Assembly (NCBI GenBank): GCA_033442325.1
Contig: JAWQFM010000016.1
Location: 1,283,679-1,347,678 of the forward strand
Direction: 5' to 3'
Length of the DNA: 64,000 bases
From: Salpingoeca rosetta
Lineage: Eukaryota > Protista > Choanoflagellata
Below, piece by piece: positions 7,859 to 64,000 of this stretch; within the stretch, counting starts at the first letter, position 1; every line of letters starts with the position of its first letter. The notes below the pieces were generated by a model, which searched no databases, was not told where the DNA came from, and saw only the letters and a program-made list of their open reading frames with translations. The position numbers were made by a program, and so were the translations under genes.

Positions 7859-10800
7859 ATGGAGAATTACGATGTGGGTTGCCTCCTGATGGAGGCTAAT
7901 GGGTGGCATTTGCTTGGGGAAGAGAGAGGGTTGGTTGTCTTTGACAGGTCGTGGGTGTCTGGTTGTAGGCTAGATGTGTGGTTGGTTGCGGTCGATTTGT
8001 GGGTTTTTGTTTGGATGTCGATCATGTGGTTGGAACCTGATCCTTGACCTCTACCACGCTCTGTGGTACACATTGGCCTCGAACCTTGATTGTGACCTTC
8101 TCTCACTCGTCTTCTTTCGTCGCTTTCCTCTCACCTGACTTCCCACTTCCCTTCCCATCTTCTCTTAACATGTTGCTTTCATCTCTCCCAACGCTTTCGA
8201 TCGGGAACTTCAGGTCATCAAGCGACTCGGTAAGGGTGCGCAGGGATCTGTGTTCCTTGTCGAAGACAAGCGTGGTGCTGGCAAGTTTGTCATGAAGAAG
8301 GTCGAATGCAACGATGAGGCTGAAGCTGAGAAGGCCTTCAAAGAGGTGGGCATTCATGTTGTGTGCGCGCGCGTGTGCACATGTGTGTTGTTTTGTTTGT
8401 GTCTGTGTGGGTATGTGTGTGTTGTTTGTTTGTGTCTGTGTGGGTATGTGTGTTGTTTGTTTGTGTGTGTGTGTGAGTATGTGTGTGGGTATGCGTATGT
8501 TGTTTTGTTTTTGTCTGTGTGGGTATGTGTGTGGGTATGTATTTGGTTTGTGTATTTGGTTGCTGGGGCATGTGCACATACTGGCGTGTCCTCACTGACT
8601 GCGCGTTTCTCATCAGGCCCTTGCGTTGGAGACGCTCTCCCACGAGTACATCTGCGGCTATCGTGAGCTGTTTGTGAACTGGGACCGTGAAGAGGCCACC
8701 ATGTTCGTCTGCATTGTCATGGACTACTACGAAGCAGGTGTGTGTTTACAACTCATGCCAGCGCACCACTCAGATGCGCGCGCGCGCGCGCGCGTGTGTG
8801 TGTGTGTGTGTGTGTGTGTGTGTGTGTGTGTGTGTGTGTGTGTGTGTGTGTGTGTCGTCGTGTTGTGTGTGTGTGNNNNNNNNNNNNNNNNNNNNNNNNN
8901 NNNNNNNNNNNNNNNNNNNNNNNNNNNNNNNNNNNNNNNNNNNNNNNNNNNNNNNNNNNNNNNNNNNNNNNNNNNNNNNNNNNNNNNNNNNNNNNNNNNN
9001 NNNNNNNNNNNNNNNNNNNNNNNNNNNNNNNNNNNNNNNNNNNNNNNNNNNNNNNNNNNNNNNNNNNNNNNNNNNNNNNNNNNNNNNNNNNNNNNNNNNN
9101 NNNNNNNNNNNNNNNNNNNNNNNNNNNNNNNNNNNNNNNNNNNNNNNNNNNNNNNNNNNNNNNNNNNNNNNNNNNNNNNNNNNNNNNNNNNNNNNNNNNN
9201 NNNNNNNNNNNNNNNNNNNNNNNNNNNNNNNNNNNNNNNNNNNNNNNNNNNNNNNNNNNNNNNNNNNNNNNNNNNNNNNNNNNNNNNNNNNNNNNNGTGT
9301 GTCGGTGTGTGTCGGTGTGTGTCGGTGTGTGTCGGTGTGTGCGTGTGGGTGTCGGTGTGTGCGTGTGGGTGTCGGTGTTGGGTGTGTGTGGGTGTGTTGG
9401 TTCTCTTTGCCCCCTTTCCCTACCCCTCCCTCCGTCTCGTACTCGCCATCGAGCGAGAGTCCAAAAGCATTTCGCGCGTGTGTCCATATTCACACCACGC
9501 TGCGACTGTGTGCAGGTGATTCATCGCGATCTGAAACCAAGCAACCTCTTCATGACAAACGACCTCGATATCCGCCTTGGTGCGTTTGTAACGTGCATGA
9601 TGTTTGCATATGTGTGTGTTTACATGTGTGTGTGTGTGTTTACATGTGTGTGTGTGTTTACATGTGTGTGTGTGTTTGCATGTGTATGTGTGTGTGTGAG
9701 CCCCTTCCCTTGATGATGTTTCATATCACACCCTTTGTCGCTCACATCCGTTCCTTCATCTATCCTCACCACCACCACCACCACCACCACCACCACCACC
9801 ACCACCATCACCACCACCACCACCACCACCACCACCCACGCTCACTCTAGGCGACTTTGGTGTGGCCACTGTGATGGAGGGCGCAAAGACCAAGACCCGC
9901 ACGACCGTCGGTACGTTGCACCTTACCTGCATGACACGACATGGCACGACACGACACGACACGGTACCACATACATGCACTGCGCACTAACACCAAACCA
10001 CCACAACCATCACCACCACCATCACCACCATGATTTCATGATTGCCTGCAGGCACGATGAATTACATGGCGCCCGAGGTGCTCGAGCGGCCATACAACGA
10101 GAAGTCGGACATCTGGTCTCTCGGATGCATTGTCCTCGACGCAGCAACATGCGGCTTCCTTGACGTTCGTGCCGGCCAATCATGATCATGATGCCGAGTG
10201 ATGGTGGAGATGGTGGTGCCAGTGGGAGTAGCACGCTCGTGAGTGGGGACTGCATGTGTATGTGTGTATACTTGTGTGTATGTCCACTCATATGAGACTT
10301 CCTTGTGGGCGCTATTCCATGCACATGTGTCACTTCCCTCATACCCTATGTGCATGATTGTGTGTATGAATGACTGTGTGTTTTTGCGTGTATGTATGCA
10401 TGTGCGCGTGTGTGAGCAGCACGGTCAGGCGCAGTCGCTGCTGTTTGAGGTGAAGCACAAGCCGCACCGACTGGAGGAGGCGCTCAAGGAAGTTGAGCGC
10501 TCCTACTCAAAGGACCTCTGCCAGGTGACCCTTTGAATCATGAATTCTGTGTGGCGGGATGCATGGCACTCGTGCACCTCCGTTCCCCGCCGTTGCAAAG
10601 TCTCTCTGTCTCCCCTTCTACTCCCCCCACCACCACCGCCACCATCGAAAATCACATCACCACCATCGACCATCGCATCACCACCACCCAATATCACATC
10701 ACTACAACTCCCTCTCTTCTCCTCACTCCCTTCTCCTCCCTCCCTCCCTCCCTTCTCATCCCACAGACGATCCGAACGATGCTGCGTCGCAACTTTCACC

Positions 10801-63151: not shown

Positions 63152-64000
63152 ATGGATGTGGTGCGAGCCGTCAAGTCGGCTGTGTTCTACGCCTGCCGCA
63201 AGGTCAAAGGCCTCAAGGGCGTTGTGCTCGACGATGCCATGGTAAGCGCTGAAAAAGGCGGGGGGAGGGGTTGGGAACCACTACGTACTGTGTGCTGCGT
63301 GCTGTGGTTGCAGTATGTGTGGCGTGCGTAGCTTGTGTGCGTGCATGTTTGTGGTGAGTCGTGCAATGGCAATGTCATTGCACACGCTCCAGCACAGTGG
63401 CAACTCCGCAGCCAGTCCTTCCTCTGCCCCTCACGCTGGTGCTCTCTTGCTCAGTTTGATACAGTGTGCATGAGCATGGGGTGGAAGCGGCAGCCCCTGC
63501 AAGAGATGGAGGTGTGTAATCCATCGCAAAGGGGGACTTGCGAGTGGGGAATCGTGTCCAGTTCAAACCTGCAGAGCATGTGTGTGTGTGTGTGTGTGTG
63601 TGTGTGTGTGCTTGGTGCACTCGGTCTGTGCTCTCACTGCGTTTGCTGCGTGCTGACTAACAACCTTGGTTGTTGATATCGATTGTTGGCGTGATGCTCG
63701 GGTTTGGCAGGTGTTCCAGTTGGATCGAGTCTCCTCACAACGAGAGCTGATGCCAGAGGTCGCGTGCATCATGATCCTTCGACCAACGCAGGTGCGTGCG
63801 TGCGTGCGTGTGTGTGTGTGTGTGTGTGTGTGTGTGTGTGTGTGTGTGTGTGTTGGTCATGTGTGTGTGTGCGTTTGTCTTTATGTGTGTAGGTGTCGTG
63901 TGCCACGTGTGCCAAGGACAAGGGTGCACACTTGTGTCAGGTGTGGCTGCTTTGTGGGCTGGACTGAATTTTGTGCATTGTCGCTATTGTTAATAGATCC
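63152..64000 (+). CDS. Sec1/Munc18-family protein, VPS45-like (5' part only)
   Basis: MDVVRAVKSAV..KGLKGVVLDDAM / ..QEME/VFQLDRVSSQRELMPEVACIMILRPT resembles the VPS45 N-terminus (MNVV.AVK.YI..GMKVLL.D..EVYLFERID..RE.M.HLK.I.FLRPT). Confidence 0.7.

What the first reader, a model, noticed from the sequence alone, without database searches (positions are those of the whole stretch)
7859..64000. Cluster of genes whose human orthologs lie on 9q34 / the MHC paralogon: possible pre-animal linkage relic
Seen: STKLD1, PHYHD1, FPGS and RABL6 lie within ~47 kb, along with FLOT1 and a VPS45-like gene. Known: human STKLD1 (C9orf96), PHYHD1, FPGS and RABL6 (C9orf86) are all on 9q34, FLOT1 is in the MHC at 6p21.3 and VPS45 is on 1q21. 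These regions belong to the classical MHC paralogon. Inference: four functionally unrelated 9q34 genes among ~14 identifiable orthologs looks like more than chance and may be a 'proto-MHC' linkage group preserved since before animals. Other genes here (NME5, ISCU, CCT7, CYB5D2) map elsewhere in human, so the signal is partial.
Basis: partly seen in the sequence, partly recalled or inferred. Interest (0 to 1): 0.75.

Follow-up and report, generated by a model that had tools for sequence, protein, structure and literature searches.

The report
Known pre-animal linkage group (ALG_M) relic
This stretch of chromosome 16 of the choanoflagellate Salpingoeca rosetta does carry four genes whose human counterparts all sit on 9q34, a real trace of a gene linkage older than animals, but that linkage (ancestral linkage group M) was published in 2022-2023 and two of the four genes are in the published list.

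Summary
The window is Salpingoeca rosetta GL832968.1:1283679-1347678 (chromosome SRO16).

**Observation: holds.** Orthologs of STKLD1, PHYHD1, FPGS and RABL6 lie within 46.6 kb. A FLOT1-type flotillin lies among them, and a VPS45-like gene starts at the window's end. NME5-like, ISCU and CCT7 are also real. CYB5D2 was not found.

**Interpretation: right, but not new.** Schultz et al. 2023 (Nature) list FPGS and RABL6 at exactly these coordinates. They sit in ancestral linkage group M (ALG_M) together with ARPC5L, SURF4, AXDND1 and ABL1 on SRO16. The published statistics are SRO16 versus ctenophore chromosome 9, P = 6.7e-17 with 23 genes, and a four-way group at alpha = 2e-7. Simakov et al. 2022 defined ALG_M.

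**What this work adds:**
- STKLD1 and PHYHD1 are likely further members of the group.
- STKLD1, PHYHD1 and CCT7 are also neighbours within 12 kb in Monosiga brevicollis.

**Limits:**
- Three other 9q34 genes that I located lie on other S. rosetta chromosomes, so retention is partial.
- Clustering within the chromosome is not significant (P about 0.06).

**Assembly gaps:** they break the STKLD1 and RABL6 coding sequences. One lies in a CCT7 intron. One abuts a 515-bp exact duplicate.

The parts
7859..14914 (+). STKLD1 ortholog (kinase domain plus ARM-repeat tail, 636-aa annotated product P0001, 19 mapped exon pieces); human STKLD1 is at 9q34.2
   Evidence: tblastn map. Pfam finds Pkinase plus ARM_LRRK2/ARM_ARMC5. 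Full-length hits are named STKLD1 across animal phyla. Called gene.
8876..9296 (.). Assembly gap inside STKLD1. The exon for kinase subdomains V-VIa (about 40 residues) is missing, and the annotated model bridges the gap with intron-derived residues.
   Evidence: Alignment of P0001 with eight orthologs. TG-repeat sequence flanks the gap on both sides.
16621..18385 (+). PHYHD1 ortholog (PTSG_06382, 273 aa); human PHYHD1 is at 9q34.11
   Evidence: Human location from PMC4080317.
18961..23228 (-). FLOT1-type flotillin (426 aa; Band_7 plus Flot); human FLOT1 is at 6p21.33 (my own knowledge)
   Evidence: Called gene with Pfam hits. Exons score 57 bits against FLOT1 and 42-44 against FLOT2. The coiled-coil exon hits FLOT1 only. 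The paralogous exon on C4 scores 50 bits against FLOT2 and 31 against FLOT1.
29350..34195 (-). FPGS ortholog (527 aa, XP_004993274.1); a published ALG_M gene; human chr9:127.8 Mb
   Evidence: Schultz et al. 2023, Supplementary Data.
48431..54450 (-). RABL6 ortholog (817 aa, XP_004993280.1); a published ALG_M gene; human chr9:136.8 Mb
   Evidence: Schultz et al. 2023, Supplementary Data.
52935..53107 (.). Assembly gap inside RABL6. An exon beginning [11 protein letters not shown] (53108-53140, minus strand) runs into the gap, so the frame across it is unknown.
63150..64000 (+). First exons of a VPS45-like Sec1-family gene that continues about 5 kb beyond the window; human VPS45 is at 1q21.2 (my own knowledge)
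   Evidence: Weak Sec1 exon hits at C16:1348706-1349157. Exon reading. The only solved-structure hits for one exon are Vps45, at a weak E = 0.17. A second exon gave nothing.
5771..7264 (-). NDK-family gene, nearest to NME5 (169 aa); not a 9q34 gene
23723..28600 (+). Group II PLP-dependent decarboxylase (GAD/CSAD-like, 498 aa); not a 9q34 gene
34655..36888 (+). RIMC1 (RIMOC1/C5orf51)-like gene, 269 aa
   Evidence: Called gene. Pfam RIMC1, E = 1.3e-5.
43092..47235 (-). EF-hand plus RBD-FIP gene (class II Rab11-FIP-like, 488 aa)
42069..42168 (.). Assembly gap between genes. The 515 bp after it (42169-42683) are identical to 43491-44005, probably a redundant contig end. This is the only gap not bridged by a gene.
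55278..55978 (-). ISCU ortholog (three IscU exons)
57576..61906 (+). CCT7 (CCT eta) ortholog; ALG_I in animals; adjacent to STKLD1 in Monosiga
   Evidence: ALG_I assignment.
59883..59982 (.). Assembly gap in a CCT7 intron. The exons on either side cover CCT-eta profile positions 203-244 and 245-325, so no coding sequence is lost.

Best explanation
The cluster is a local sample of a chromosome-scale ancestral linkage. S. rosetta chromosome 16 descends from the same pre-animal chromosome as BCnS ancestral linkage group M. In vertebrates, after two genome duplications, that group ended up mainly on 9q33-q34, with sister blocks on 1q, 19p13 and probably 6p21.3.

The genes are functionally unrelated. 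They stay on one chromosome because translocations between chromosomes are rarely fixed. Rearrangement within the chromosome freely scrambles their order. The 47-kb proximity in S. rosetta therefore reflects a compact genome (about 3.5 kb per gene here) and shuffling inside an ALG_M-derived chromosome. It does not reflect a preserved gene cluster.

- Shown: the gene identities and the match to the published ALG_M list.
- Inferred: that STKLD1, PHYHD1 and FLOT1 belong to the same ancestral group, and that the mechanism of retention is passive.
For: **Published linkage**
- FPGS and RABL6 at these exact coordinates are in the ALG_M list of Schultz et al. 2023, with ARPC5L, SURF4, AXDND1 and ABL1 on the same S. 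rosetta chromosome.
- The four-way group SRO16/HCA9/EMU16/RES3 has alpha = 2e-7.
- SRO16 versus HCA9 gives Fisher P = 6.68e-17 with 23 genes.
- Simakov et al. 2022 define ALG_M as BFL8 = RES3 = EMU16 and report ALG relics in S. rosetta scaffolds.

**Gene identities**
- STKLD1 orthology.
- PHYHD1 orthology.
- FLOT1-type assignment by a reciprocal exon comparison.

**STKLD1 in animals**
- Trichoplax STKLD1 lies on DS985242.1 (9.74 Mb), the second record of that assembly. The paper gives TRIADscaffold_2 for group M.
- Rhopilema STKLD1 lies at 7.2 Mb of a 16.76-Mb record. That size fits RES3, whose listed genes reach 16.1 Mb.

**Human positions**
- FPGS at 127.8 Mb and RABL6 at 136.8 Mb.
- PHYHD1 at 9q34.11.
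- STKLD1 beside SURF4 and ABO.

**Order is not kept**
- None of the other window genes lies within 10 kb of STKLD1 in Trichoplax, Rhopilema or Branchiostoma lanceolatum.
Against: - My own a-priori test of six other human 9q34 genes located three in S. rosetta: ASS1 on C23, PTPA on C3 and SURF1 on C24. None is on C16. Retention is therefore partial, and a single window cannot prove linkage.
- At least seven other recognisable genes in the window map elsewhere in human, and CCT7 is ALG_I in animals.
- I did not test PHYHD1, FLOT1 or VPS45 on invertebrate chromosomes.
- The identification of the Trichoplax and Rhopilema records with scaffold_2 and RES3 is inferred from accession order and length.
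Confidence: 0.9

Rival explanations
1. This is a constrained microsyntenic block. The genes here, or a core such as STKLD1-PHYHD1-CCT7, are kept close together by selection, for example through shared regulatory elements or chromatin domains. The distal 170 kb of SRO16 would then be a denser relic than the rest of the chromosome.
For: - In Monosiga brevicollis, PHYHD1, STKLD1 and CCT7 lie within 12 kb of each other. In S. rosetta they lie within 54 kb.
- Four of the six published ALG_M genes on SRO16 lie within 170 kb around this window.
Against: - The clustering of 4 of 6 genes within 170 kb has simulated P = 0.06, which is not significant.
- Gene order and orientation differ between the two choanoflagellates. 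A HAD hydrolase sits between PHYHD1 and STKLD1 in Monosiga, and a 112-aa gene sits there in S. rosetta.
- No adjacency is seen in Trichoplax, Rhopilema or amphioxus.
- In human the four genes are spread over 9 Mb.
Confidence: 0.08
2. The cluster is chance or an assembly artefact. The four genes are together by coincidence, or because unrelated contigs were scaffolded across the gaps.
For: - For the window alone, four of 13 survives correction for 29 linkage groups only marginally (0.0015-0.06, depending on the assumed size of the group).
- No gene bridges the gap at 42069-42168, and it abuts a 515-bp exact duplicate.
- Zero of three other located 9q34 genes are on C16.
Against: - The published chromosome-wide statistics are strong.
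- Three of the four gaps lie inside genes with exons on both sides.
- Monosiga independently links CCT7 (right of the unbridged gap) with STKLD1 and PHYHD1 (left of it).
- The Hi-C based SRO16 of Schultz et al. keeps the same coordinates.
Confidence: 0.02

Closest known systems
BCnS ancestral linkage group M (ALG_M) and its pre-metazoan relic on S. rosetta chromosome 16 and Capsaspora chromosome 4 (Simakov et al. 2022, Sci Adv; Schultz et al. 2023, Nature)
   Same: It is the same chromosome and the same linkage group. FPGS and RABL6 of this window are in the published gene list at the same coordinates. The human counterparts are concentrated at chr9:124.9-136.8 Mb.
   Different: STKLD1, PHYHD1, FLOT1 and VPS45 do not occur in any of the paper's supplementary files held as text, the four-way reciprocal-best-hit lists among them.
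MHC paralogon / proto-MHC region (human 1q, 6p21.3, 9q33-q34, 19p13; Abi-Rached et al. 2002; Vienne et al. 2003; revisited in PMC13012124)
   Same: Four genes have human orthologs inside the 9q33.2-q34.3 block, and FLOT1 lies in the 6p21.33-p21.31 block. One amphioxus chromosome corresponds to all four human blocks.
   Different: - None of the classical multi-copy marker families of the paralogon is in the window.
- VPS45 at 1q21 is outside the 1q23.3-q25.3 block as that paper draws it.
- Nakatani et al. 2021 consider the extended proto-MHC chromosome an artefact.
- Nothing immune-related is involved.

Membership tests
BCnS ancestral linkage group M (ALG_M) | Orthologs lie on the ALG_M chromosomes of sponge, cnidarian and bilaterian (EMU16, RES3, BFL8/PMA2) | tested here: met
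   This holds for FPGS and RABL6. The published rows give EMU16, HCA9, RES3, PMA2 and HSA9 for both genes. FPGS is on BFL8 and RABL6 on BFL12. Their S. rosetta coordinates, 1313028 and 1332110, equal window 29350 and 48432, where I find the FolC-type and RABL6-type exons.
BCnS ancestral linkage group M (ALG_M) | STKLD1 ortholog lies on an ALG_M chromosome in animals | tested here: inconclusive
   - Trichoplax STKLD1 is on DS985242.1 (9.74 Mb). Taking it as scaffold_2 is an inference from accession order.
- Rhopilema STKLD1 is at 7.17 Mb of a 16.76-Mb record. That length fits RES3, but the identity is not proven.
- B. lanceolatum STKLD1 is on CM068855.1, whose chromosome number I could not verify.
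- Human STKLD1 is beside SURF4, a listed ALG_M gene.
BCnS ancestral linkage group M (ALG_M) | PHYHD1, FLOT1 and VPS45 orthologs lie on ALG_M chromosomes in invertebrates | not tested
   Only human positions are known. PHYHD1 is at 9q34.11. FLOT1 at 6p21.33 and VPS45 at 1q21.2 come from my own knowledge. None of the three is in the supplementary lists.
BCnS ancestral linkage group M (ALG_M) | Chromosome-wide excess of ALG_M orthologs on the S. rosetta chromosome, by Fisher or permutation test | not testable with these tools
   The published values are P = 6.68e-17 for 23 genes and alpha = 2e-7 for the four-way group. My small test of six other 9q34 genes found 0 of 3 located genes on C16. It has low power and shows only that retention is partial.
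MHC paralogon | Human orthologs fall inside the four paralogous blocks (1q23.3-q25.3, 6p21.33-p21.31, 9q33.2-q34.3, 19p13.2-p13.11) | tested here: inconclusive
   STKLD1, PHYHD1, FPGS and RABL6 fall inside the 9q block. FLOT1 falls inside the 6p block, from my own knowledge. VPS45 at 1q21.2 lies outside the 1q block as drawn in PMC13012124.
MHC paralogon | Multi-copy marker families with one member per block (NOTCH, PBX, RXR, BRD, tenascin and others) | tested here: not met
   None of these is among the 18 genes of the window.
STKLD1 (SgK071) kinase family | N-terminal kinase domain plus C-terminal ARM-like repeats, with full-length best hits being STKLD1 | tested here: met
   Pkinase covers residues 4-269 and ARM_LRRK2/ARM_ARMC5 covers 347-612. 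More than 50 hits named STKLD1 or SgK071 have 33-44% identity over 90-100% of the length.
PHYHD1 | Closer to PHYHD1 than to PHYH or other PhyH-family dioxygenases | tested here: met
   The only solved-structure match at E <= 0.001 is human PHYHD1 (2OPW/3OBZ), E = 2.8e-55. No chain named PHYH appears in the result.
Flotillin-1 | Closer to FLOT1 than to FLOT2, with a separate FLOT2-type gene in the same genome | tested here: met
   The window exon scores 57 bits against FLOT1 and 42-44 against FLOT2. The C4 exon scores 48-50 bits against FLOT2 and 31 against FLOT1. These are single-exon comparisons and no tree was built.
CCT eta (CCT7) | Best match to the CCT-eta equivalog model rather than to other CCT subunits | tested here: met
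   TIGR02345 is the top model for 10 of 11 exons, for example 139.9 bits against 48 or less for the others on the exon at 60060-60311.

The most novel reading that the evidence does not exclude
Inside the ALG_M-derived chromosome there is a sub-chromosomal relic held together more tightly than chromosome-scale drift predicts. It would be a STKLD1-PHYHD1(-CCT7) neighbourhood conserved between two distant choanoflagellates, set in a distal stretch of about 170 kb of SRO16. That stretch carries at least six to eight ALG_M genes: AXDND1, STKLD1, PHYHD1, FLOT1, FPGS, RABL6, possibly VPS45, and ABL1. It would point to a regulatory or chromatin constraint that predates animals.
Probability: 0.12. Interest if true: 0.4.

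Novelty: already known. Interest (0 to 1): 0.2.

Why it matters
Linkage groups shared by animals and their unicellular relatives show that animal chromosomes descend from pre-animal chromosomes. They were also the characters used to place ctenophores as the sister group of all other animals. This window is a clear, compact illustration of one such group, ALG_M, which is the 9q34 part of the MHC paralogon.

The general point, this chromosome and two of these genes are already published. What remains is modest:
- STKLD1 and PHYHD1 are candidate extra markers for ALG_M, and FLOT1 may be another.
- A neighbourhood is shared by two choanoflagellates.
- The reference gene models of STKLD1 and RABL6 are damaged by assembly gaps.

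Tried and rejected
- **Pfam on long open reading frames.** Ten long ORFs, then 45 ORFs of at least 110 aa, found almost nothing. Exons are 20-60 aa and the introns are low-complexity TG/CA repeats that stay open.
- **Self-trained codon-usage exon finder**. It was swamped by low-complexity sequence. A simple amino-acid-composition filter on six-frame translations worked better.
- **PhyH search of the whole genome**. It missed the PHYHD1 gene in the window, a false negative of exon-wise scoring. I therefore do not read the failures for COQ4, GLE1 and MBF1 as absence.
- **Exact look-ups of two ORFs as single-exon genes**. Both failed.
- **CYB5D2.** There is no Cyt-b5 hit on this chromosome region, no Pfam hit in the ORFs between STKLD1 and PHYHD1, and no cytochrome-b5/MAPR motif in any frame.
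- **Is the SH3-SH2-kinase gene 7 kb from Monosiga STKLD1 an ABL ortholog?** The SH2 exon scored SYK above ABL2 and ABL1, so this is unresolved.
- **A second VPS45 exon** gave no solved-structure match.
- **Supplement search** for KIFAP3, CDC73, GLMP and the record names, to tie the Rhopilema and Trichoplax records to RES3 and scaffold_2, found nothing.
- **Joined exon models.** Searches used single exons by reference, or the annotated database proteins P0001 and P0123 that a tool returned. The joined step was left out.
- **Large representative-protein search.** It was not used.
- **Human sequence.** Nothing here looks human.
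Full report
**Where the window lies.** It is Salpingoeca rosetta GCA_000188695.1, scaffold GL832968.1, bases 1283679-1347678, which is G000:C16. GC content is about 55%. Exons are short, often 20-60 codons, and the introns are full of TG/CA and other low-complexity repeats. Pfam scans of long open frames therefore found almost nothing. I read genes from six-frame translations filtered by amino-acid composition. 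I then checked them exon by exon by reference, or through annotated S. rosetta proteins that the word search returned. I never joined exons into a spliced model for any tool, so that step is left out.

**Gene inventory (and those cited below).**

| Window position | Strand | Gene |
|---|---|---|
| ends at 982 | + | 502-aa gene, no family |
| 2122-4836 | + | 5'-nucleotidase family |
| 5771-7264 | - | NDK; NME5 is the top solved-structure hit, narrowly ahead of NME7 |
| 7859-14914 | + | STKLD1 |
| 15395-16128 | - | 112-aa gene, no family |
| 16621-18385 | + | PHYHD1 |
| 18961-23228 | - | flotillin |
| 23723 to about 28600 | + | PLP-dependent decarboxylase |
| 29350-34195 | - | FPGS |
| 34655-36888 | + | RIMC1-like |
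| 37139-39234 | - | LRR protein |
| 39594-41852 | + | 752-aa protein, no family |
| 43092-47235 | - | EF-hand plus RBD-FIP protein |
| 47604-47972 | + | 122-aa gene |
| 48431 to about 54450 | - | RABL6 |
| 55278-55978 | - | ISCU |
| 57576-61906 | + | CCT7 |
| about 63150 onward | + | VPS45-like, continues beyond the window |

**The four 9q34 orthologs are real.**
- STKLD1. The annotated protein P0001 has a kinase domain and an ARM-repeat tail. Outside choanoflagellates its best full-length hits are proteins named STKLD1 or SgK071, from sponges to amphioxus, at 40-44% identity.
- PHYHD1. Among all solved structures P0123 matches only human PHYHD1, E = 2.8e-55.
- FPGS and RABL6. They are listed by accession and coordinate in the supplementary data of Schultz et al. 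2023. SRO16:1313028 and 1332110 are window 29350 and 48432, which is exactly where the called genes begin.
- Flotillin. It is FLOT1-type. Its exon scores 57 bits against FLOT1 and 42-44 against FLOT2. A paralogous exon on contig 4 scores the other way round.
- CYB5D2 is the one name I could not confirm.

**Gaps.**
- 8876-9296 lies inside STKLD1. Every ortholog has a conserved stretch of about 40 residues (kinase subdomains V-VIa) where the S. rosetta model has unrelated residues read from intron sequence. An exon is lost there.
- 52935-53107 lies inside RABL6, and an exon runs straight into it.
- 59883-59982 lies in a CCT7 intron. The exons on either side cover CCT-eta profile positions 203-244 and 245-325.
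- 42069-42168 lies between genes. It is followed by 515 bp identical to 43491-44005, probably a redundant contig end. It is the only join not verified by a gene that spans it.
- That join still has support. In Monosiga, CCT7 (right of the gap) sits next to STKLD1 and PHYHD1 (left of it). The Hi-C based SRO16 of Schultz et al. also uses the same coordinates.

**What it is.** Simakov et al. 2022 defined 29 ancestral linkage groups, among them ALG_M (BFL8 = RES3 = EMU16). They reported that 16 groups leave significant traces on scaffolds of S. rosetta, Monosiga or Capsaspora. Schultz et al. 2023 made chromosome-scale assemblies of the unicellular relatives and found 20 groups shared by S. rosetta and animals.
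- Their group 19 is 'M': SRO16, HCA9, EMU16 and RES3, with six genes and alpha = 2e-7.
- The merged table gives COW4, SRO16, HCA9, BMI9, EMU16, CLA16, TRIADscaffold_2, NVE9, RES3, BFL8 and PMA2.
- The six S. rosetta genes are SURF4 (239 kb), ARPC5L (340 kb), AXDND1 (1260 kb), FPGS (1313 kb), RABL6 (1332 kb) and ABL1 (1429 kb).
- Their human partners lie at chr9:124.9-136.8 Mb, and AXDND1 at 1q25.
- An independent analysis in the same paper gives SRO16 versus HCA9 a Fisher P of 6.68e-17 with 23 genes, the lowest P value among the rows of those tables that I read.
- All six SRO16 entries in that gene table are ALG_M.

**The 'MHC paralogon' label.** A 2026 amphioxus paper finds one cephalochordate chromosome matching human 1q23.3-q25.3, 6p21.33-p21.31, 9q33.2-q34.3 and 19p13. 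This fits the human positions of the ALG_M genes. FLOT1 falls in the 6p block. VPS45 at 1q21 lies outside the 1q block as drawn there. Nakatani et al. 2021 regard the wider proto-MHC chromosome as a composite. None of the classical multi-copy marker families is in the window.

**What is added here.**
- STKLD1 and PHYHD1 are not in the supplementary files searched. Their human genes lie inside the same 9q interval.
- Trichoplax STKLD1 is on DS985242.1, the second record of the assembly, 9.74 Mb long.
- Rhopilema STKLD1 is at 7.2 Mb of a 16.76-Mb record of the assembly used in the paper. Both findings are consistent with ALG_M, but the record-to-chromosome identities are inferred.
- In Monosiga brevicollis, PHYHD1, a HAD hydrolase, STKLD1, a 210-aa gene and CCT7 lie within 12 kb. 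A STKLD1/PHYHD1/CCT7 neighbourhood is thus shared by two choanoflagellates, although CCT7 belongs to ALG_I in animals.
- In Trichoplax, Rhopilema and B. lanceolatum nothing from this window lies within 10 kb of STKLD1.

**How much is chance?**
- For the window alone, four of 13 recognisable orthologs from one group gives nominal P of 5e-5 to 2e-3. After correction for 29 groups this is 0.0015-0.06, depending on the assumed share of the group. The result is stronger if FLOT1 counts (the shares are my estimates).
- Once the chromosome is known to be ALG_M-derived, four of 13 is unremarkable. P is 0.12-0.58 for a 15-30% share.
- The six published genes are not significantly clumped. Four within 170 kb has P = 0.06.
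- In my a-priori test of six further 9q34 genes, ASS1 is on C23, PTPA on C3 and SURF1 on C24. COQ4, GLE1 and EDF1 were not detected. Retention is therefore partial, as Schultz et al. also say ('limited residual conservation').

**Mechanism.** The best-supported reading is passive chromosome-scale retention with free shuffling inside the chromosome. Schultz et al. discuss the population-genetic reason, which is that translocation heterozygotes have reduced fertility. A selected microsyntenic block is not excluded, but the tests possible here do not support it.

**Verdict.** Novelty is 'already known'. The residue is small: two or three likely extra ALG_M markers, a neighbourhood shared by choanoflagellates, and damaged reference gene models.

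Noticed in passing
window 20338-20430: A 93-bp element inside a flotillin intron recurs about 90 times, at 75-97% identity, on many contigs of the genome. It is often found in nearby direct or inverted pairs and looks like a MITE or SINE.
   Followed up: no
window 42169-42683 and 43491-44005: A 515-bp exact duplicate starts at the first base after the gap at 42069-42168 and ends in a microsatellite. The second copy lies inside the EF-hand/RBD-FIP gene and includes an exon. It is probably a redundant contig end.
   Followed up: partly
window 8611-9587 (STKLD1, protein P0001 residues about 84-124): The reference gene model bridges the assembly gap with about 40 residues read from intron sequence. 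These replace the conserved kinase subdomains V-VIa that every ortholog has. Conclusions about the catalytic competence of this protein should use the 75%-identical transcriptome ortholog P0004 for that stretch.
   Followed up: yes
L009/L010 (Monosiga brevicollis CH991543.1:2059906-2087262): PHYHD1, a HAD hydrolase, STKLD1, a 210-aa gene and CCT7 lie within 12 kb. An SH3-SH2-tyrosine-kinase gene lies 7 kb further on. Its SH2 exon scores SYK above ABL, so whether it is the ABL ortholog is open.
   Followed up: partly
window 16621-18385 (PHYHD1, P0123): The annotated 273-aa model lacks the region matching human PHYHD1 residues about 179-219. It also has a 60-residue alanine/glutamine-rich N-terminal extension that overlaps an open frame on the opposite strand. 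The model probably has a missed exon and a doubtful start.
   Followed up: no
G000:C4:510296-510418 (L012): There is a second, FLOT2-type flotillin exon on another chromosome. S. rosetta therefore has both flotillin types, and the FLOT1/FLOT2 duplication predates animals.
   Followed up: partly
window 34655-36888: The 269-aa gene next to FPGS matches Pfam RIMC1 (RAB7A-interacting MON1-CCZ1 complex subunit 1) at E = 1.3e-5. It scores 25.0 bits, which is exactly the family's cut-off. It may be a pre-animal RIMOC1 ortholog.
   Followed up: no
G000:C16 versus GL832968.1: The contig held by the genome tool is 1,484,697 bases long. The NCBI record is 1,475,472 bases. Coordinates agree through the window, so the difference lies elsewhere.
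   Followed up: no
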